64,000 nt of DNA from positions 1 to 64,000 of IMG/VR virus record IMGVR_UViG_3300036770_007495. One strand, 5' to 3'. A program made the position numbers and the translations under genes. The notes beneath the pieces are model-generated. The model was not told the DNA's origin, made no database searches, and worked only from the letters and a program-made list of their open reading frames with translations. Position 1 is the first letter of the stretch. Each line of letters starts with the position of its first letter. Below are positions 8,774 to 63,885 of this stretch, in pieces.

Positions 8774-8848
8774 AAGGGTGCGATGCGGTTAGTGACGCAT
8801 ATGAGGCAACTCTGGCTTAGGCAAATTGGTGCAATTCCAATCACCCTT
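8774..8848 (+). ncRNA. Anticodon-less tRNA-like RNA (family member 1)
   Basis: AAGGGTG/CACCCTT acceptor, ATGCG/CGCAT D-stem, ATTGG-TGCAATT-CCAAT T-arm; same architecture as 29425..29566. Confidence 0.6.
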
Positions 8849-8887
8849 TTTAGTTGATTTTGCCAATGTTCTAAGCTAATATGTGTC

Positions 8888-12863: not shown

Positions 12864-12897
12864 TTGACTGTCTGCAGATTTGCATTATAATGAATGC
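12864..12897 (+). promoter_or_regulatory. Sigma70-like early promoter, leaderless
   Basis: TTGACT-N16-TATAAT-N6-ATG. Confidence 0.8.
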
Positions 12898-14082
12898 ATG
12901 AACAATTATCTTGCTCAACACTTTTGGAACTACGAAACCAATTGCATTGATGGTCTGAAGCTGTGGAGTGCTCTGCAGCCGCACATTGCAAAAGGTGAAC
13001 TCATTGTCAACGAAGGCAAAGGTGATCGCGAAGGCCTCAAGCTTGTAACCTATTCCAAGACCTATCAGTACGAACACAATTCTGTTGCATGGGATCCTCT
13101 TGTGCAGCATTGCCGCGGCATCATCTTTGATGCAACTGATGACTACAAGATCGTAGCTCTTCCCTTCTCCAAGTTCTTCAACTATGGTGAAGGCGGCATT
13201 CATTATCCTTCCGCTGGTGCTGAGATTGAACAGGTTTGGACCAAATATGACGGTTCACTGTTCATCATCTTTCATTGGAAAGATAAGTGGCATGGAACTA
13301 CCCGCGGATCACTCAATTCAGATATTGGACAGGTGGGTCAGCAGATTCTGGATAGCTATGTGCACAATGGATTGGTTATGCATCGAGATTACACTTATCT
13401 TGCAGAGTTGATTTACAAGGAAAATCAAATTGTTGTAAATTATGGTGATGATCGCAAGCTTGTGCTGCTTGGTGTGCGTAATCGTTATGCAGGCCATGTT
13501 TATATGCCTGATTGGATCATTGATCGCTTTCATGGTGGATTGACAATTAAGCCGTTTGAAGTTGCTCGTCGTTGGAAATTTGCAAACAAAGAAGAAATGC
13601 TTGCATGGCTCAACCAAACCAAAGGTACTGAGTTTGAAGGCTTTGTGGTGCACTTCTCTGATGAAACTGTTTTCAAGTTCAAGTCTGAAGACTACATGCG
13701 TCTGCATCGCATCATTGCTCAGTTCACGTTCAAGCGTGTGCTGGAAGCTGTGCAGCTGCATCAAGAAGAAGAAATTCGCAAGGCATTGCCAGAAGAGCTC
13801 ATCCCTGAATTCGATCGTTACAAGTGGATGATTGAAGACAAAGTGGACAGCATCATTGCATATGTTGACAAGATTGTGCACAATGCTCCAAAAAGCTCTC
13901 GCAAAGAGTTTGCACTTTATTTGCAACAGTATTACAAAGGTACAGATGCAATGAAGTATGCATTCAAGTACATTGACTTTGAAATGAACGTTGACAAGCT
14001 TGGCGAGCACATTTTGCAAAGCTTGCGCCGCGATGACTTTGAAGTTGCAGAGGACAAAAACAAAGATGATATTGATTCATGA
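12898..14082 (+). CDS. RNA ligase 1 (T4 RnlA-like)
   Basis: CRGIIF, PFSKFFN, KYDGS, TRGS, FEGFVV, KFKS.DY..LHR. Confidence 0.9.
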   Translation: MNNYLAQHFWNYETNCIDGLKLWSALQPHIAKGELIVNEGKGDREGLKLVTYSKTYQYEHNSVAWDPLVQHCRGIIFDATDDYKIVALPFSKFFNYGEGGIHYPSAGAEIEQVWTKYDGSLFIIFHWKDKWHGTTRGSLNSDIGQVGQQILDSYVHNGLVMHRDYTYLAELIYKENQIVVNYGDDRKLVLLGVRNRYAGHVYMPDWIIDRFHGGLTIKPFEVARRWKFANKEEMLAWLNQTKGTEFEGFVVHFSDETVFKFKSEDYMRLHRIIAQFTFKRVLEAVQLHQEEEIRKALPEELIPEFDRYKWMIEDKVDSIIAYVDKIVHNAPKSSRKEFALYLQQYYKGTDAMKYAFKYIDFEMNVDKLGEHILQSLRRDDFEVAEDKNKDDIDS

Positions 14083-15388: not shown

Positions 15389-16855
15389 ATGAACATCAAT
15401 CCTGCATCTCTCATTGACGGCTACAAAGTCGGCCACATTCATCAGTATCCCAAGAATACTGAAATCATCTTCAGCAATTTGACAGCACGTTCCACCCGCC
15501 GTCTCAACACTGACAAGGTGGTTTTCGCAGGCCTGCAGTACTTCGTCAAAGAGTACCTCATCAAGCAGTGGAATGAAAACTTCTTCCACAAGCCCATTGA
15601 AGAAGTCGTTCACAAGTTCAATCGTCGCATCAACAATTACATTGTACCTAACAATGTTGGTGATCAGCACATTCGCGACCTGCACGAGCTTGGCTATCTG
15701 CCAATTGTAATTCTTGCTCTGCCAGAAGGCACTGAACATCCCATCAAGGTGCCAAGCCTTGTCATCTGGAATACAGATGAGCGCTTTGGTTGGCTCACCA
15801 ATTATCTGGAGACCATTCTGTCCACCAGCATCTGGGGCCCTTGCACCAGCGCCACTACTGCTCACCAGTACAAAAAGTTGCTCATGAAGTATGCTGCAGA
15901 GACTGTTGGTGATACCAGCTTTGTTCAGTGGCAGGGTCATGACTTCAGCTTCCGTGGCATGTATGGTCTTGAAGCTGCTTGCATGAGTGGCGCTACTCAC
16001 CTCTTCAGCTTCACGGGCACTGACACTGTTCCTGCTATCGACTTCCTTGAACAGTACTACAATGCTGACAGCGAGAAGGAACTTGTTGGTGGCAGCGTTG
16101 CTGCAACTGAACACAGCGTCATGTGCGCTGGTGGTGCTGACAATGAGATTGGCACTTTCCGTCGTCTGATTCATGATGTGTATCCGACTGGCATTGTGTC
16201 CATTGTGAGTGACACTTGGGACTACTGGAACACCATCACCAACATTGCTCGCGAGCTCAAGGATGAAATCATGCATCGTGATGGCAAGGTTGTCTTCCGC
16301 CCCGATACTGGGGATCCAGTCAGGGTTGTCATTGGTGATGAAGATGCTGCAAAAGATTCACCTGAATATAAAGGCTCCATTGAATGTCTTTGGGAGGTCT
16401 TTGGCGGCAAGGTGAACGCCAAGGGCTACAAGGAGCTTGATCCGCATGTGGGTCTCATCTATGGTGACAGCATCACGCTGGAACGTGCTCAGCAGATCTG
16501 TGAAGGTCTCAAGCGCAAGGGCTTTGCCAGCACCAACATTGTGTTTGGCGTTGGTAGCTACACTTACCAGTATGTGACTCGTGACACTGATGGCTATGCA
16601 GTCAAGGCAACCTATGCCAAGATTGATGGTCAGGATAAGGAAATCTTCAAGTCTCCCAAGGGTGCTGCATTCAAGAAGAGTGCCAAGGGTCTGACTGCTG
16701 TCTTCAAGGATGCTGATGGTGAGTTCTACCTCAAGGATCAGGCCACTTGGGATGAAGTTCACAACTGCGAATTCGTTGAAGTGTTTGCTGATGGTCATGT
16801 CGTCAAGGATTATACTCTGCAGGAAGTTCGCAACAACCTGGCTCAATACGTCTAA
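15389..16855 (+). CDS. Nicotinamide phosphoribosyltransferase-like protein (Namat-like)
   Basis: DGYK.GH..QYP, HDFSFRG, ATEHSVM, VSDTWD, RPDTGDP, IYGDSIT, KKSAKG. Confidence 0.93.
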   Translation: MNINPASLIDGYKVGHIHQYPKNTEIIFSNLTARSTRRLNTDKVVFAGLQYFVKEYLIKQWNENFFHKPIEEVVHKFNRRINNYIVPNNVGDQHIRDLHELGYLPIVILALPEGTEHPIKVPSLVIWNTDERFGWLTNYLETILSTSIWGPCTSATTAHQYKKLLMKYAAETVGDTSFVQWQGHDFSFRGMYGLEAACMSGATHLFSFTGTDTVPAIDFLEQYYNADSEKELVGGSVAATEHSVMCAGGADNEIGTFRRLIHDVYPTGIVSIVSDTWDYWNTITNIARELKDEIMHRDGKVVFRPDTGDPVRVVIGDEDAAKDSPEYKGSIECLWEVFGGKVNAKGYKELDPHVGLIYGDSITLERAQQICEGLKRKGFASTNIVFGVGSYTYQYVTRDTDGYAVKATYAKIDGQDKEIFKSPKGAAFKKSAKGLTAVFKDADGEFYLKDQATWDEVHNCEFVEVFADGHVVKDYTLQEVRNNLAQYV

Positions 16856-27675: not shown

Positions 27676-27751
27676 GGCTGCATAGACCAACGGCAGAGTC
27701 ATGGGACTTAAAATCCTTGTAGTATGGGTTCGAATCCCATTGCAGCTACCA
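27676..27751 (+). tRNA. tRNA-Leu(TAA), short variable loop
   Basis: GGCTGCA/TGCAGCT acceptor, CT-TAA-AA loop, TTCGAAT T-loop, encoded CCA. Confidence 0.88.
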
Positions 27752-28044: not shown

Positions 28045-28356
28045 ATGAACAAAGACCAAATTCAACTGCGCATCAAAAACATTGAAGCTGAAATTCTCAA
28101 GCTGCGAAAAGAGCTTGATGCAATTGAAAAGGCTGAAAATCTTTTTGAAGATCGAGGCGCCGACGCCGACTACACATTTGAAGAAGTTAATGACATTGTG
28201 ACTGACCGCTTTCACCCTGCAGAGTTTGCAGTGCGCACTGGCGGCAAATATGCTTACAATGGCATCTTTTTGGGCGGTGTCGGCGGTGAATGTCCTTGGA
28301 AAATCATCAGAGATGAAGAAGACGCATGGGTGCTTGTATTGACATGCAACAAATAA
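28045..28356 (+). CDS. Hypothetical protein
   Basis: Leaderless early gene. Confidence 0.55.
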   Translation: MNKDQIQLRIKNIEAEILKLRKELDAIEKAENLFEDRGADADYTFEEVNDIVTDRFHPAEFAVRTGGKYAYNGIFLGGVGGECPWKIIRDEEDAWVLVLTCNK

Positions 28357-29011: not shown

Positions 29012-29418
29012 GCGCGGTTAGCTCAATGGTCAGAGCAGGGAACTCGATAGGGTCGGTGCATTGGAAACGATGCATTTGTAAGGTGTAAATTCGGTGAACG
29101 GTTTAATCTCCCAACGCCGAGCGAAGCGGGCACTGTAAAGGAATGAGAATCGTCGGGTAAGCCAAACTCGAAAGAGTGGAACCCCTGACAGCCCGAACGT
29201 GTAGAGACTATAATCACCTGCCTAAGTTTTGCGGATAAGTCTCACCTAACTGTGAACGTAAAATAAGGCAAAGGCATAGTCCAGACCACAAACAGAGTGA
29301 GAGACGTTGAAACGGAACGGTGCGTATTCTCATAAGTTATTCCGTAACTCTGGTAGTGAAAACTATAGTGGTAAGCATAATTCCTTGGTTGGGGGTTCGA
29401 ATCCCTCACTGCGCACCA
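29012..29418 (+). tRNA. tRNA(CAT) (elongator Met or Ile2) interrupted by a group I intron
   Basis: Exon 1 29012-29044 ends GGGAACT; exon 2 29376-29418 CATAATTCCT...TTCGAAT...ACCA; G1-C72 paired so not initiator. Confidence 0.88.
29045..29375 (+). mobile_element. ORF-less group I intron (331 nt)
   Basis: Exon ends in U, intron ends in G; P1 ACT|C-GATA-GGGT with U.G pair; P AATTCGGTGAA, Q AACGCCGAGC, R GTAGAGACTA, S AAGGCATAGTCC. Confidence 0.88.
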
Positions 29419-29424
29419 ATTTTT

Positions 29425-29566
29425 GACTCAGCGGCGTGGACAGTGACACGCGATGAAATGACTGGCCTGAATAAGATCGCAACTTATAACAGGAAAGAGT
29501 CCCAGCCTGAAAAGGTAATAGTAGTCTAATCCTAGGCAGCTGGTGCAATTCCAGCCTGAGTCATCA
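29425..29566 (+). ncRNA. tRNA-like RNA with ~80-nt insert replacing anticodon arm (family member 2)
   Basis: GACTCAG/CTGAGTC, GCGTG-GACAGTGA-CACGC, GCTGG-TGCAATT-CCAGC. Confidence 0.65.
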
Positions 29567-42891: not shown

Positions 42892-43000
42892 TGAGTGCAT
42901 GGTGAAATGGTAAACACAGCCGTTGGCGAGGAGGTCGCCATTACGCGGGGCCGCTGATTTAATCACAGCTTGTGGGTTCAAATCCTGCTGCACTCAATCA
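42892..43000 (+). ncRNA. tRNA-Leu-like RNA with extended anticodon arm
   Basis: GAGTGCA/TGCACTC; GTGAAATGGTAAACAC D-arm; long variable arm; GTGGG-TTCAAAT-CCTGC; TGGCGA-GGAGG-TCGCCA apex. Confidence 0.6.
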
Positions 43001-58612: not shown

Positions 58613-59056
58613 GGGGGCGAACTGGCTTCGACTCAATTGGTTGATTCAGATTCGCATGCAGAGGTAGACTAGCTGGCCTCTATAAAAGCAAGTCAAAAAA
58701 CATAAACGCAGAAGACACTGAAGTCGATGCCCTCTTGGCGCAAGCTGAGTACATCTTCAACAATGCTGACGAATTCCTCGTCAACGAAGTTGAAATGGCA
58801 CTCGCTGCCTAAGCAAAAACAATGTTGGATCCTATTAAAAACATTGAGGCAAGCAATAGGTGGAGCTGAACAATGTATGCTCTTAAATCAAACATTGGGG
58901 TGATGTCAGACTCTTCACTGACATAGGTAGGCTCTAAAACTCAGGTTGATGCGCCATGCAAACCTTTTGCCAATGAAATTGCAAATGCATCCAAGCATGT
59001 AGACGGTTTGATGATGTTGATTGAACACAGGGGTTCGACTCCCCTCGCCTCCACCA
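58613..59056 (+). ncRNA. ssrA: tmRNA
   Basis: GGGGGCGAACTGGCTTCGAC 5' end; GGTTCGACTCCCCTCGCCTCCACCA 3' end; G3.U70; tag ORF 58708-58812 ending ALAA*. Confidence 0.95.
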
Positions 59057-61983: not shown

Positions 61984-62058
61984 GGCTGCTTAGCTGAGAT
62001 AGATTAGCGTCTGCCTGAAGAGCAGAAAAGACTGGAGCGTTACCAGTAGCAGCCACCA
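61984..62058 (+). tRNA. tRNA-Phe(GAA), non-canonical T-loop
   Basis: Full cloverleaf, CT-GAA-GA, T-loop AGCGTTA, CCA. Confidence 0.85.
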
Positions 62059-62062
62059 TTTC

Positions 62063-62151
62063 GGGACCTGCCCCCATCAGCGGACTGTAAATCCGTTGCC
62101 ATTAATAAGATGGGAAGTTGGCAAGTGGTGCGTTACCACCAGGGCCCACCA
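62063..62151 (+). tRNA. tRNA-Tyr(GTA) lacking a D-arm
   Basis: GCGGA-CT-GTA-AA-TCCGT; long variable arm; T-loop TGCGTTA; ACCA. Confidence 0.75.
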
Positions 62152-62306
62152 TTTCAAGTTGGAGATGACGCGCTGTGTTGTCTTTAAAACGCTAACCAAC
62201 AAGAACAAACTAGTAATGCCGCTAGTATATACAAAGGCAGTCCTCATCACCTTATGGTGCTGATATGGCTTCTTTTTCCGTGAGCCCGTTAATCACGGAA
62301 TATTTT

Positions 62307-62397
62307 GGAGAGAGCCCGGCTAGACGAGGAGCAATCTTGGAAAGATTGTAACACTTCGAAAGAGGTGTTAAGGGTGCGAGTCCCTTTCTCTCCTCCA
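62307..62397 (+). tRNA. tRNA-Ser(GGA)
   Basis: CAATC-TT-GGA-AA-GATTG; long variable arm; T-loop TGCGAGT; CCA. Confidence 0.8.
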
Positions 62398-62403
62398 TTT
62401 TAT

Positions 62404-62493
62404 GGGCAGTTAACTAGACAAGCGCGCTGGGACCGACTTGAAATCGGATCGAGGTCGAAAGGCCTTGGGGTGCAAGCCCTCAGCTGCCCGCCA
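62404..62493 (+). tRNA. tRNA-Ser(TGA)
   Basis: CCGA-CT-TGA-AA-TCGG; long variable arm; T-loop TGCAAGC; GCCA. Confidence 0.82.
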
Positions 62494-62499
62494 TTTTAT

Positions 62500-62574
62500 G
62501 CGGATATAATTCAGTGGTAGAATATCTCGTTGCCAACGAGAGTGTCGTCGGTTCAAATCCGACTATCCGCTCCA
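62500..62574 (+). tRNA. tRNA-Gly(GCC)
   Basis: Canonical cloverleaf, TCCA. Confidence 0.95.
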
Positions 62575-62655
62575 ATTAACCGTAGTGGAGAATCTACGGC
62601 ATAACAAAATCTCTTAGATTGCAGAAACCTAACAAAACGCTGCGCCTATTTCAAA

Positions 62656-62732
62656 CGGGATGTAGCTCAGCCTGGTAGAGCGCTTGCTTTGGGAGCAAGA
62701 TGTCGTCGGTTCGAATCCGGCTATCCCGACCA
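62656..62732 (+). tRNA. tRNA-Pro(TGG)
   Basis: Canonical cloverleaf, ACCA. Confidence 0.95.
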
Positions 62733-62934
62733 ATTTTGCGGAGCAGAAATGCTAGTGTGCGGCCGAAAGACTGATGATGCGGCGTTTCGGGTAAAACCTC
62801 GCGATCATCTCGCAAATTTAGATGTGGGTGAAAGTCCCAGAAGCATCACAGATGCTTGTTCCACGACGGGCTCTAAAGACTTGAACTGACAAGTGCAAGG
62901 GTGAGTGTAAAGGTACTCCCCACAAATTTCAAAT

Positions 62935-63009
62935 GCGGTGTAGATGTTAATGGCTGCACACCTGACTTCCAATCAGAAGGAGGGGGTTCGATTCCCCCAC
63001 ACCGCACCA
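62935..63009 (+). tRNA. tRNA-Gly(TCC)
   Basis: CTGA-CT-TCC-AA-TCAG; TTCGATT; ACCA. Confidence 0.88.
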
Positions 63010-63013
63010 ATTT

Positions 63014-63234
63014 TATCAGAAGGAAGTTGGCTTAGAAGCAGCCATCTATAATGAGTGAAGCGAAGTACGAGTCTCCAACATCAACGGCCTAGTAAGGTGA
63101 CTGTGATAATGCATGATGTATCAGAGTCAGATATTGGCTCATGCGTTGGATATCGTCTGACTGCGGATAGTAAAAGAGCACCCCGTAAATGGTAAGGCTT
63201 AATTCTTCTTAGGCGTAACAGCACACCTCTGATA
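63014..63234 (+). ncRNA. 23S rRNA GTPase-associated-centre (H43/H44) mimic with internal insertion
   Basis: GTTGGCTTAGAAGCAGCCATC and GCGTAACAGCACAC match the L11-binding domain; closed by TATCAGA/TCTGATA. Confidence 0.75.
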
Positions 63235-63242
63235 TATTTTAA

Positions 63243-63336
63243 GGATCCATGACAGAGCCTGGTATTGTACGTCCCTGCTAAGGACAGGTCAGCCCCTAAA
63301 AAGGCTGCGTAGGTTCAAATCCTACTGGATCCGCCA
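63243..63336 (+). tRNA. tRNA-Ser(GCT)
   Basis: GTCC-CT-GCT-AA-GGAC; long variable arm; TTCAAAT; GCCA. Confidence 0.92.
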
Positions 63337-63374
63337 TTTTGTTGCTTTAAATCGTTCATGAGATAAATCACGTT

Positions 63375-63800
63375 ATGAATGAAATTGAACAACTTAAATC
63401 AGAGTTTGAAGAACTCAAAAATGCACAACAAGAAACAATCTTTGAAGACCACAACATTGTGGGTGATGCAGAATCATATGTTGGTTCATTGAACAGTGGT
63501 CTAAAAGAGCTAGTTAATCACTACGTGATGGATTATCTCATCATCATGAATGCGTTAAAGTTCATGACTGGCCCAGTTGCTTGCTATCAAGGCAAAGCAA
63601 TTGAGGCACAAACAATCAAGTTTGAAACAATGAAAGAGTTGAGAGACTTTCTCAAAGACAAACAATATTTGCTGTATGTAATTGTTGCACATGCAAGTGT
63701 TACATATGAAGAAGTGGAATGGACTAAAACAATGGCACCTAATGCTAAAACAATTGGTGCAAAAATTTCATACCTCTTTAGAGGTCATATTCTAGAGTAA
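63375..63800 (+). CDS. Hypothetical protein
   Basis: 141-aa ORF within tRNA cluster. Confidence 0.6.
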   Translation: MNEIEQLKSEFEELKNAQQETIFEDHNIVGDAESYVGSLNSGLKELVNHYVMDYLIIMNALKFMTGPVACYQGKAIEAQTIKFETMKELRDFLKDKQYLLYVIVAHASVTYEEVEWTKTMAPNAKTIGAKISYLFRGHILE

Positions 63801-63808
63801 TTTCAATT

Positions 63809-63885
63809 CGGGTGGTGTCTGGACAAGTAAACGAACTCGGTTTGGAGTCGAGTAAATGTGGGAGCGTTACCCACTCACCCGACCA
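63809..63885 (+). tRNA. Second, divergent tRNA-Pro(TGG)
   Basis: CGGGTGG/TCACCCG-ACCA; TT-TGG-AG loop (A37); T-loop AGCGTTA. Confidence 0.75.

What the first reader, a model, noticed from the sequence alone, without database searches (positions are those of the whole stretch)
61984..63885. Coordinated re-wiring of the tRNA elbow: D-loop AG co-occurring with T-loop G55
Seen: Phe (D-loop GAGATAGATT, T-loop AGCGTTA), Ser-GGA (GCTAGAC / TGCGAGT), Ser-TGA (ACAAGCG / TGCAAGC) and Pro2 (ACAAGTA / AGCGTTA) replace the near-universal G18G19 with AG and U55 with G. Gly-GCC, Gly-TCC, Pro1, Ser-GCT, Leu and the CAT tRNA keep GG with TTC. The tRNA-like RNAs at 8774 and 29425 follow the AG/G55 rule too. 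Known: G18-Psi55 and G19-C56 form the elbow. Inference: a compensatory A18-G55 elbow that bypasses TruB/TrmA modification or evades elbow-recognising host nucleases or sensors.
Basis: partly seen in the sequence, partly recalled or inferred. Interest (0 to 1): 0.72.

Follow-up and report, generated by a model that had tools for sequence, protein, structure and literature searches.

The report
Alternative A18-G55 elbow in phage tRNAs
About half of the tRNAs of this 225-kb phage replace the "universal" G18-U55 contact at the tRNA elbow with an A18-G55 contact. The swap recurs in hundreds of phage tRNAs and in one bacterial lineage, seems undescribed in the papers I could search, and hides these tRNAs from standard gene finders.

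Summary
The window holds the start of a 10-kb tRNA array of a distant T4-like jumbo phage. In the whole genome, 18 tRNAs and 2 tRNA-like RNAs pair D-loop A18-G19 with T-loop G55-C56. Another 21 keep G18-G19 with U55-C56. None is mixed. G19, C56, R57 and G53-C61 are kept in both classes.

In IMG/VR, the same 16-nt tRNA-Phe D arm gives 110 of 110 U55 when it reads GG, and 54 of 56 G55 when it reads AG. In IMG/VR loci the table is 490 G/U, 94 A/G, 6 A/U and 0 G/G.

Structurally this is the generic T-loop solution (YGNRA plus an intercalating adenosine) known from riboswitches and rRNA.

The tRNAs look functional:
- Seven amino acids in this phage are served only by them.
- Cultured Acinetobacter and Streptomyces phages carry them.
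- The only tRNA-Cys found in a Saccharibacteria genome has this elbow.

Loss of Psi55 (and usually m5U54) follows directly from the sequence. Nuclease or sensor evasion is untested, and known anti-phage tRNases cut the anticodon arm. I rate this a new variant of a known kind. The adaptive reason remains open.

The parts
61984..62058 (+). tRNA-Phe(GAA), alternative elbow: D loop agatAGat, T loop AGCGTTA, encoded CCA
   Evidence: Rfam tRNA 44.6 bits; cloverleaf parse. Same D arm as T5 tRNA-Phe except GG to AG.
62063..62151 (+). tRNA-Tyr(GTA)-like gene, T loop TGCGTTA (G55), no D hairpin at the usual place, encoded CCA
   Evidence: Missed by ARAGORN and Rfam. The secondary structure of its core is unresolved.
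62307..62397 (+). tRNA-Ser(GGA), alternative elbow: gctAGacga / TGCGAGT
   Evidence: ARAGORN; parse.
62404..62493 (+). tRNA-Ser(TGA), alternative elbow: agacAAGcgcgc / TGCAAGC
   Evidence: Structure scan. Missed by ARAGORN and Rfam.
62500..62574 (+). tRNA-Gly(GCC), canonical elbow: agtGGta / TTCAAAT
62656..62732 (+). tRNA-Pro(TGG), canonical elbow: agcctGGta / TTCGAAT
   Evidence: 85-91% identical to tRNA-Pro of many cultured phages.
62935..63009 (+). tRNA-Gly(TCC), canonical elbow: taatGGct / TTCGATT
63243..63336 (+). tRNA-Ser(GCT), canonical elbow: agcctGGta / TTCAAAT
63809..63885 (+). second tRNA-Pro(TGG), alternative elbow: ggacAAGtaaa / AGCGTTA
   Evidence: Structure scan. Missed by ARAGORN and Rfam.
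8774..8849 (+). 76-nt tRNA-like RNA without CCA: 7-bp acceptor-like stem, 5-bp D-like stem with loop gttAGtga, T arm with TGCAATT
29425..29563 (+). tRNA-like RNA with a large insert in place of the anticodon arm: D-like loop gacAGtga, T loop TGCAATT
   Evidence: Homologues in other viral contigs L449 and L519.
27676..27751 (+). tRNA-Leu(TAA), canonical elbow (control)
29012..29418 (+). tRNA with CAT anticodon split by an insertion of about 335 nt in the anticodon loop, canonical elbow: aatGGtca / TTCGAAT
58613..59056 (+). phage tmRNA, canonical T loop TTCGACT (control for T-loop type)
   Evidence: Rfam 98.3 bits; sequence.

Best explanation
These are working tRNA genes that build the tRNA elbow in a second way. 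In ordinary tRNAs, D-loop residue G18 slots between T-loop residues 57 and 58 and hydrogen-bonds to U/Psi55, while G19 pairs with C56. Here residue 18 is A and residue 55 is G. G19-C56, purine 57 and G53-C61 are unchanged.

This is the combination used by T-loops outside tRNA: a consensus (U/C)GNRA loop whose G at position 2 is contacted by an intercalating adenosine. The outer face of the elbow (G19-C56), which ribosome, RNase P and T-boxes read, is therefore preserved. The inner G18-Psi55 contact is exchanged for A18-G55.

Shown: the covariation, its recurrence in tRNAs for all 20 amino acids, its presence in cultured phages, and its presence in a bacterial tRNA-Cys that is the only one found in its genome.

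Direct consequence of the sequence: no Psi55, no modification of G18, and in about 60% of cases no U54 to methylate.

Inferred: the 3D geometry, and that the alternative elbow folds and functions without these host modifications. That independence would explain why it is tolerated or favoured in phage tRNAs that are made in bulk late in infection.

The confidence given covers the structural reading and the claim that these are functional tRNAs. It does not cover the adaptive reason, which I rate at about 0.3.
For: Own genome: 18 A18/G55 tRNAs, 21 G18/U55, 0 mixed.

IMG/VR loci, with the D-loop register chosen without using position 55: 490 G/U, 94 A/G, 6 A/U, 0 G/G, Fisher 1e-102.

Matched control: the exact D arm GCTGAGATGGATTAGC gives 110/110 U55, and GCTGAGATAGATTAGC gives 54/56 G55. 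The T-loop backgrounds are the same (ATCGTTA/AGCGTTA, CTCGATA/CGCGATA, TTCGATA/TGCGATA).

In the closest AG/GG pair, all 8 differences are paired changes: acceptor, anticodon stem and 18/55.

G19 94-95%, C56 94-96% and G53-C61 99% in both classes. In MAG arrays, 19-56 itself co-varies (AC+G56, AT+A56) while G55 stays.

Literature:
- Residue 18 intercalates between T-loop positions 4 and 5 and contacts Psi55; the G19-C56 face is the recognition surface (PMC4810234).
- Non-tRNA T-loops are UGNRA 88.7% and CGNRA 10.9%. The intercalating base is almost always A and bonds the sugar edge of G at position 2. rRNA has a GGAAG loop.

Function:
- Phe, Tyr, Thr, Gln, Asp, His and Arg-ACG are supplied only by this class in the phage.
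- An annotated tRNA-Phe of Acinetobacter phage Kimel has it, and the surrounding 5.8-kb region matches 65 Acinetobacter phage records.
- Phe and His of Streptomyces phage Mildred21 have it.
- The one tRNA-Cys found in a 1.0-Mb Saccharibacteria genome has it. It recurs in 13/201 sampled genomes with compensated anticodon stems.
- Metatranscriptome contigs cover these tRNAs at word depths up to 1377, against 0-8 over the ORF-containing stretches between tRNAs in the same four runs.
Against: There is no structure, charging or modification data, so the A18-G55 geometry is inferred by analogy. The RNA-library coverage comes from assembled contigs of relatives, and DNA carry-over cannot be excluded.

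About 47% of the alternative loops (A54/U58, G54/G58) fall outside the YGNRA consensus. A few G55 tRNAs in MAG arrays lack A18, for example tRNA-Gln with aatCGta.

The benefit of modification independence is not demonstrated. The phage keeps 21 canonical tRNAs, and in the Saccharibacteria genome only tRNA-Cys is changed.
Confidence: 0.75

Rival explanations
1. Defence or discrimination device. The changed elbow makes phage tRNAs invisible or resistant to a host (or phage-encoded) nuclease, toxin or sensor that reads the G18/T54-Psi55 signature or cuts uridines in the D and T loops. The phage therefore keeps translating when host-type tRNAs are attacked.
For: - Phage tRNAs are known to escape tRNases through sequence changes (PMC10264068, PMC11555353, PMC12445682).
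- A T-loop-cutting tRNase exists, CdiA-CT E479. Cas13 collateral cleavage hits D loops, T loops and CCA tails.
- The trait clusters by genome: 27% of the other tRNAs are G55 in loci with an AG tRNA-Phe, against 2.6% in loci with a GG tRNA-Phe.
- Canonical and alternative copies of the same isoacceptor coexist: Pro-TGG, Ile-GAT and Glu-TTC here, Phe and His in Mildred21.
- Exposed uridines are depleted: U17 31% vs 68%, U60 40% vs 76%, D-loop U 17% vs 26%.
- The phage carries a T4 Rnl1-like RNA ligase, the family that repairs cleaved tRNA in T4 (the repair role is my own knowledge).
Against: - Every anti-phage tRNase named in the papers read cuts the anticodon arm, not the elbow.
- 21 of the phage's own tRNAs remain canonical.
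- The same elbow is fixed in a chromosomal bacterial tRNA-Cys.
- The neighbourhood association test gave no nuclease or immunity candidate.
Confidence: 0.2
2. Nearly neutral compensated drift. Phage tRNAs are under relaxed constraint because they are short-lived and need not depend on TruB, TrmA or TrmH. The A/G state is an equally workable alternative, reached through the rare A18/U55 intermediate and then spread within lineages by descent, duplication or recombination.
For: - The A18/U55 intermediate exists at about 1%, while G18/G55 was not seen in IMG/VR.
- The alternative class also shows relaxed 54-58 pairing and other loosened positions.
- Genome-level clustering and the HNH homing endonuclease association fit shared ancestry or recombination.
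- Alternative tRNAs are more diverged, with no BLAST relatives among cultured phages. The canonical tRNA-Pro is 85-91% identical to many.
Against: - It does not explain why 18 isoacceptors in one genome moved in the same direction.
- It does not explain why some MAG-binned arrays are almost entirely G55.
- The state is stably conserved: the tRNA-Phe region matches 65 Acinetobacter phage records, and the tRNA-Cys recurs in 13 Saccharibacteria genomes.
Confidence: 0.3
3. The A18/G55 genes are decaying pseudogenes or non-translational tRNA mimics (decoys).
For: - ARAGORN and Rfam both miss 9 of the 18.
- Two clearly non-tRNA elements (8774, 29425) share the elbow.
- The tRNA-Tyr-like gene lacks a D hairpin.
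Against: - They have intact 7-bp acceptor stems, 5-bp T stems, 7-nt anticodon loops with U33 and purine 37, and encoded CCA.
- Compensatory changes occur in all stems.
- They are needed for 7 amino acids of an otherwise complete set.
- A tRNA-Cys with this elbow is the only one found in a cellular genome.
Confidence: 0.04

Closest known systems
Canonical tRNA elbow (G18-Psi55, G19-C56, T54-A58, purine 57)
   Same: Same cloverleaf, same G19-C56 outer pair, same purine 57, same G53-C61, same 7-nt T loop and same D-loop position of the contact.
   Different: Residue 18 is A and residue 55 is G. The 54-58 pair is U.A in only 39%, with A.U 29%, G.G 18% and C.A 8%. Residue 60 is mostly A. Psi55 and G18 modification are impossible.
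Generic T-loop with intercalating adenosine (FMN and cobalamin riboswitches, RNase P, rRNA; consensus YGNRA, rRNA GGAAG)
   Same: G at T-loop position 2 together with an adenosine as the base inserted between positions 4 and 5. U or C at position 1, with G-G also known.
   Different: Here it sits in a tRNA and also keeps a Watson-Crick pair from position 3 (C56) to G19. The A54/U58 loops (AGCGU, AGCAU) are outside the published consensus. The 3D equivalence is inferred, not shown.
tRNAPyl and mammalian mitochondrial tRNA-Ser(UGA): functional tRNAs without G18G19 / T-Psi-C
   Same: A working tRNA can lack the 'universal' elbow sequences. D. hafniense tRNAPyl has G55 (PMC1851642).
   Different: tRNAPyl has a 5-nt D loop, one nucleotide between acceptor and D stems, a 6-bp anticodon stem and a 3-nt variable loop, and lacks the canonical D- to T-loop contact. 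The phage tRNAs have ordinary dimensions and keep G19-C56.
Phage tRNAs that escape anti-phage tRNases (PrrC, PARIS AriB, retron PtuAB, P2-OLD)
   Same: Phage copies of tRNAs differ from host tRNAs at conserved positions and can coexist with host-like ones.
   Different: Those changes are in the anticodon loop or stem and have a demonstrated nuclease. Here the change is at the elbow and no cognate nuclease is known.

Membership tests
tRNA (Rfam RF00005 / cloverleaf) | 7-bp acceptor stem, 5-bp T stem with 7-nt loop, 5-bp anticodon stem with 7-nt loop (U33, purine 37), D arm, discriminator plus CCA | tested here: met
   Structure-only parse of Phe, Ser-GGA, Ser-TGA and Pro2, and of 13 further genes beyond the window. 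Tyr 62063 lacks a D hairpin.
tRNA (Rfam RF00005 / cloverleaf) | Covariance-model score at or above the 29-bit gathering threshold | tested here: inconclusive
   Phe scores 44.6 bits. Ser-GGA scores 18.4 bits over a partial alignment. Ser-TGA, Pro2 and Tyr are not reported even at E<=10. Genome-wide, both tools miss 9 of 18. The model penalises exactly the changed positions.
Canonical tRNA elbow | G18 and U(Psi)55 | tested here: not met
   A18 and G55 in 18 tRNAs of the genome.
Canonical tRNA elbow | G19-C56 tertiary Watson-Crick pair, purine 57, G53-C61 | tested here: met
   All 18 have G19, C56 and R57. Across 336 alternative tRNAs: G19 94%, C56 94%, G53-C61 99%.
Generic T-loop motif (YGNRA plus intercalating A) | Position 2 = G, position 4 = purine, positions 1-5 able to pair (U.A or C.A), inserted base = A | tested here: met
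   Met at sequence level for the U54/A58 and C54/A58 loops, 47% of the class. G.G loops (18%) match the rRNA GGAAG type. A.U loops (29%) are outside the consensus.
Generic T-loop motif (YGNRA plus intercalating A) | 3D: the adenosine stacks between positions 4 and 5 and hydrogen-bonds the sugar edge of G2 | not testable with these tools
   No RNA 3D prediction or structure is available. Inferred from the covariation alone.
tRNAPyl-type compact tRNA | 5-nt D loop, single nucleotide between acceptor and D stem, 6-bp anticodon stem, 3-nt variable loop | tested here: not met
   D loops are 6-12 nt, there are two nucleotides at positions 8-9, anticodon stems are 5 bp and variable loops are 4 nt or longer. 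tRNAPyl features are.
tRNA pseudogene / decoy | Broken stems, aberrant anticodon loop, no conservation or compensation | tested here: not met
   Stems are intact. Compensatory changes are seen among homologues. The tRNA-Phe region matches 65 Acinetobacter phage records.

The most novel reading that the evidence does not exclude
The A18-G55 elbow is a molecular 'flag' that lets some protein tell phage-type from host-type tRNAs. The protein could be a phage enzyme that destroys or disables host tRNAs while sparing its own. It could also be a host elbow-directed defence that these tRNAs escape. Either would make the elbow, not only the anticodon loop, a front line of the phage-host tRNA arms race. 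It would also provide a natural orthogonal tRNA scaffold.
Probability: 0.15. Interest if true: 0.88.

Novelty: new variant of a known kind. Interest (0 to 1): 0.74.

Why it matters
Psi55 and G18 are described as universally conserved. Here a second, internally consistent elbow appears in tRNAs for all 20 amino acids. It makes up 27% of the other tRNAs in loci that hold an A18 tRNA-Phe, against 2.6% in loci that hold the G18 version. It occurs in cultured phages of Acinetobacter and Streptomyces and in a bacterial lineage.

Practical consequences:
- Standard tRNA finders missed 9 of the 18 in this phage, so phage tRNA repertoires and 'codon compensation' analyses are biased.
- These tRNAs necessarily lack the most widespread elbow modifications. 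This gives a natural test of what TruB, TrmA and TrmH are for.
- The 18-55 toggle is a clean natural double-mutant cycle for T-loop structural biology and a possible scaffold for engineered tRNAs.
- If a discriminating protein exists, it opens a new axis of phage-host conflict.

Tried and rejected
- BLAST of four alternative tRNAs against cultured phages found nothing useful. The wider array query only hit canonical tRNA-Leu.
- An ORF inside the array (63375-63797) has no relatives in IMG/VR.
- A search for gene families enriched beside G55-rich arrays (44 vs 101 loci) gave only an HNH homing endonuclease, a metallophosphoesterase, a GT4 glycosyltransferase and an SPFH protein. This is most likely shared ancestry, with no mechanistic lead.
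- Ro-like RNA-binding protein and RtcB lie next to some G55 arrays. This phage has no TROVE, RtcB or CCA-adding enzyme, so they are not required.
- A tree of the tRNA-Phe family gives 21-22 switches on the best tree but only 3 on supported branches. A 73-nt gene is too short for a rigorous count.
- A GNRA-tetraloop reading of G55-C56-R57-A58 is rejected, because residue 58 is A in only 48%.
- Restriction-site (TCGA/TTCGAA) avoidance is rejected, because half the tRNAs keep TTCGA and residue 18 co-varies at the RNA level.
- Chance is rejected.
- Literature searches for G55/A18/U55G in tRNA or phage context found no description of this elbow. The library lacks most subscription journals, so prior description cannot be excluded.
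Full report
**What the window is.** The window is the first 64 kb of a 224,703-bp IMG/VR virus record with direct terminal repeats and 41% G+C. Portal, tail sheath, gp43-type DNA polymerase (about 30% identical to those of Pelagibacter phage HTVC008M, Methylophilales phage Melnitz and cyanomyophages), ribonucleotide reductase and an SbcC-like protein mark it as a deep-branching T4-like jumbo myovirus. The best DNA holder is a subsurface metagenome. The finding's coordinates are the first 1.9 kb of a tRNA array that runs from 61984 to 71668, beyond the window.

**Checking the observation.** ARAGORN and Rfam report only part of the array. I therefore used a scanner that demands only stems, U33, purine 37 and CCA.

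A fifth gene (62063-62151, Tyr anticodon loop, T loop TGCGTTA) was missed.
- Genome-wide, 18 tRNAs combine A18-G19 with N-G55-C56-R57, and 21 combine G18-G19 with U55-C56. None is mixed.
- The initiator-like tRNA-Met at 67163 also belongs to the G55 class.
- Fisher tests on bracketing counts give 1.4e-10 and 4e-12.
- C56, purine 57 and G19 are invariant in both classes.

**Generality of the covariation.**

- An IMG/VR scan for one G55 T arm returned 119 loci. Among all cloverleaf tRNAs in them, with the D-loop register set without using position 55, the 18/55 table is 490 G/U, 94 A/G, 6 A/U and 0 G/G.
- The cleanest test selects on the D arm only. The exact 16-mer GCTGAGATAGATTAGC (A18) gives 56 cloverleaf tRNA-Phe genes, 54 with G55. 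The same 16-mer with GG gives 110, all with U55.
- The T-loop backgrounds are shared and differ only at position 55: ATCGTTA/AGCGTTA, CTCGATA/CGCGATA and TTCGATA/TGCGATA.
- In the closest AG/GG pair all eight differences are paired changes: two acceptor pairs, one anticodon-stem pair and 18/55. The contact behaves like a base pair.
- Alternative elbows occur in tRNAs for all 20 amino acids. With the anticodon masked, their nearest canonical relative has the same amino-acid identity in 131 of 346 cases, against 19 expected. The state therefore arose, or is maintained, inside many isoacceptor families.
- On a tree of the tRNA-Phe family the best topology needs 21-22 switches, but only three lie on supported branches. 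All three are concordant.

**How it most likely works.** In tRNA, residue 18 intercalates between T-loop positions 4 and 5 (57/58) and makes a single hydrogen-bond pair with the 'universally conserved' Psi55. The exposed G19-C56 face is what ribosome, RNase P and T-boxes recognise. In T-loops outside tRNA the consensus is UGNRA (88.7%) or CGNRA (10.9%). The inserted base is almost always adenosine, and it bonds the sugar edge of the G at position 2. A GGAAG loop occurs in rRNA.

The phage loops are UGCRA, CGCAA and GGCAG, plus AGCGU and AGCAU, which are not in that consensus. They sit opposite an adenosine at position 18. The simplest reading is that these tRNAs use the generic T-loop solution while keeping the outer recognition face. 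This is inference from sequence and precedent. No structure exists.

**Signature of the class (336 versus 1241 unique tRNAs).**

| Position | Alternative | Canonical |
|---|---|---|
| U54 | 41% | 90% |
| 54/58 pair | U.A 39%, A.U 29%, G.G 18%, C.A 8% | U.A 90% |
| A57 | 44% | 19% |
| A60 | 55% | 10% |
| U17 | 31% | 68% |
| U8 | 75% | 91% |

These tRNAs cannot carry Psi55 or a modified G18, and mostly cannot carry m5U54. They also expose fewer uridines.

**Are they functional?**

- All stems and anticodon loops are intact and CCA is encoded.
- Phe, Tyr, Thr, Gln, Asp, His and Arg-ACG are supplied only by this class, so the phage has a 20-amino-acid set only if they work.
- Cultured phages carry them. 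The annotated tRNA-Phe of Acinetobacter phage vB_AbaM_Kimel reads agatAGat / TGCAATT, and the surrounding 5.8-kb region matches 65 Acinetobacter phage records. Streptomyces phage Mildred21 has an A18/G55 Phe and His beside canonical paralogues.
- The same pattern scan of bacterial genomes found a chromosomal tRNA-Cys(GCA) with gagAAGtta / AGCGTTA in many Saccharibacteria. In one 1.0-Mb genome it is the only tRNA-Cys among 42 tRNAs, and the only one with G55. It recurs in 13 of 201 sampled genomes of the class, with compensated anticodon stems.
- Freshwater and wastewater metatranscriptome contigs cover the alternative tRNAs. One reaches word depth 1377, while the ORF-containing stretches between tRNAs in the same four runs show 0-8. 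This is suggestive only, because the contigs come from relatives and DNA carry-over is possible.

**Why phages have it.** This remains open.

- The trait clusters by genome. Where the tRNA-Phe is A18/G55, 27% of the other tRNAs are G55, against 2.6% where it is canonical (odds ratio 13.7). Some contigs binned with Verrucomicrobia or Planctomycete MAGs carry arrays that are almost entirely G55, with Ro-like protein or RtcB genes nearby.
- Modification-independent folding, defence evasion and nearly neutral compensated drift all fit parts of the data.
- For evasion: phage tRNAs do escape tRNases, a T-loop-cutting toxin exists, Cas13 collateral cleavage hits D and T loops, and this phage has a T4 Rnl1-like ligase.
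- Against evasion: every anti-phage tRNase in the papers read cuts the anticodon arm, half of this phage's tRNAs are canonical, and a cellular lineage uses the same elbow.
- A neighbour-gene association test found nothing mechanistic.

**Comparison and novelty.** The nearest known things are the canonical elbow, the generic T-loop with intercalating adenosine, and the compact non-canonical tRNAPyl, which has G55 but a different architecture and no D- to T-loop contact. Full-text searches found no description of an A18-G55 elbow, with the caveat that subscription literature is not covered. I rate it a new variant of a known kind.

Noticed in passing
L001:3706-3785 (genome 64706-64785) and L001:7857-7939 (genome 68857-68939); also L047, L057, L030, L085, L108, L067, L080, L371, L069, L418, L250, L265, L088, and L431:20232-20307 and L431:15244-15318: A recurrent phage tRNA-Arg family (ACG, TCG, TCT, CCT) has no D hairpin. 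The order is acceptor, TA, 4-5 nt, anticodon arm, a short strand, a D-loop-like TAAYTGGA and then the T arm. The 2-3 nt after TA co-vary with the 2-3 nt just before TAAYTGGA, which suggests a three-way-junction tRNA. The copy at 64706 is the A18/G55 version (TAATTAGA with TGCAACT). In Streptomyces phage Mildred21 such genes are annotated 'tRNA-Phe' and 'tRNA-OTHER'.
   Followed up: partly
window 62063-62151: A tRNA-Tyr(GTA)-like gene has an encoded CCA, a G55 T loop, a 7-bp anticodon stem and no D hairpin. Its core fold is unresolved, and neither gene finder reports it.
   Followed up: partly
window 8774-8849 and 29425-29563; L449 and L519: A family of tRNA-like RNAs has a 5-bp D-like stem, loop gNNAGTGA, T loop TGCAATT and no anticodon arm or a variable insert in its place. 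One lies directly after a stop codon. The other lies between a tRNA and the next ORF. Homologues exist in other viral contigs, and one of them ends in ACCA. Function unknown.
   Followed up: partly
window 58613-59056: The phage encodes a tmRNA (Rfam 98.3 bits) with predicted tag peptide GAEQCMLLNQTLG and a canonical T loop.
   Followed up: no
window 29012-29418 and 42893-42996: Two tRNA genes carry insertions. A CAT-anticodon tRNA is split by about 335 nt inside the anticodon loop (probably an intron, though no Rfam intron family matched the stretch searched, which begins about 110 nt upstream of the gene). A 104-nt tRNA scores 37 bits with extra sequence after the anticodon region.
   Followed up: partly
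window 62152-62306, 62733-62934, 63010-63242; genome 65864-65963: Non-coding spacers of 100-230 nt between tRNAs have low predicted folding energies (no shuffle control was run). They recall the stable RNAs of unknown function annotated in the T5 tRNA region. Most tRNAs are followed by an (A)TTTYAAA or ATTTTATG motif right after CCA.
   Followed up: no
window 12880-14079 and 15389-16852: A T4 Rnl1-like RNA ligase (phrog_562, 1.3e-55) and a nicotinamide phosphoribosyltransferase (phrog_448, 1.9e-197) are encoded here. In other phages these gene types are linked to tRNA repair and NAD salvage.
   Followed up: no
L001:8370-8457 (genome 69370-69457) and L001:9706-9801 (genome 70706-70801): One tRNA has a long variable arm (class II body) but a TGT (Thr) anticodon. 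An Ile-TAT tRNA has a 25-nt variable region. Both have canonical elbows.
   Followed up: no
L125, L138, L139, L146, L162, L166, L196, L204, L223, L227 (contigs binned in Verrucomicrobia or Planctomycete MAGs): tRNA arrays in which nearly every tRNA has G55. In some, the 19-56 pair itself is swapped (AC with G56, AT with A56) while A18 and G55 stay. Ro-like RNA-binding protein (phrog_850) or RtcB genes lie next to them. These are probably phage DNA binned with the MAGs.
   Followed up: partly
L556 (G002:C3:11975-12060) and 12 further genomes: A Saccharibacteria chromosomal tRNA-Cys(GCA) has A18/G55 (gagAAGtta / AGCGTTA). It is the only tRNA-Cys found in one 1.0-Mb genome. CPR tRNA-His genes with aaaAGta / AGCGTTA were also seen (L195, L234).
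   Followed up: partly
L121 (T5 28210-28286) and several IMG/VR loci: There is a separate compensated elbow change, G19-C56 to A19-U56 (D loop GA with T loop TTT). Examples are T5 tRNA-Ile1 and about ten IMG/VR tRNAs. The outer elbow pair therefore also co-varies in phage tRNAs.
   Followed up: partly
L430:8296-8370 (Acinetobacter phage Kimel 77896-77970): A phage tRNA with a CTA anticodon (amber-reading) is annotated 'tRNA-Pyl' and has a canonical elbow.
   Followed up: no
genome 66614-66695 (L001:5614-5695): A tRNA-like gene has a 5-nt loop where the anticodon loop should be, a canonical elbow and an encoded CCA. It may be a degenerate tRNA.
   Followed up: no
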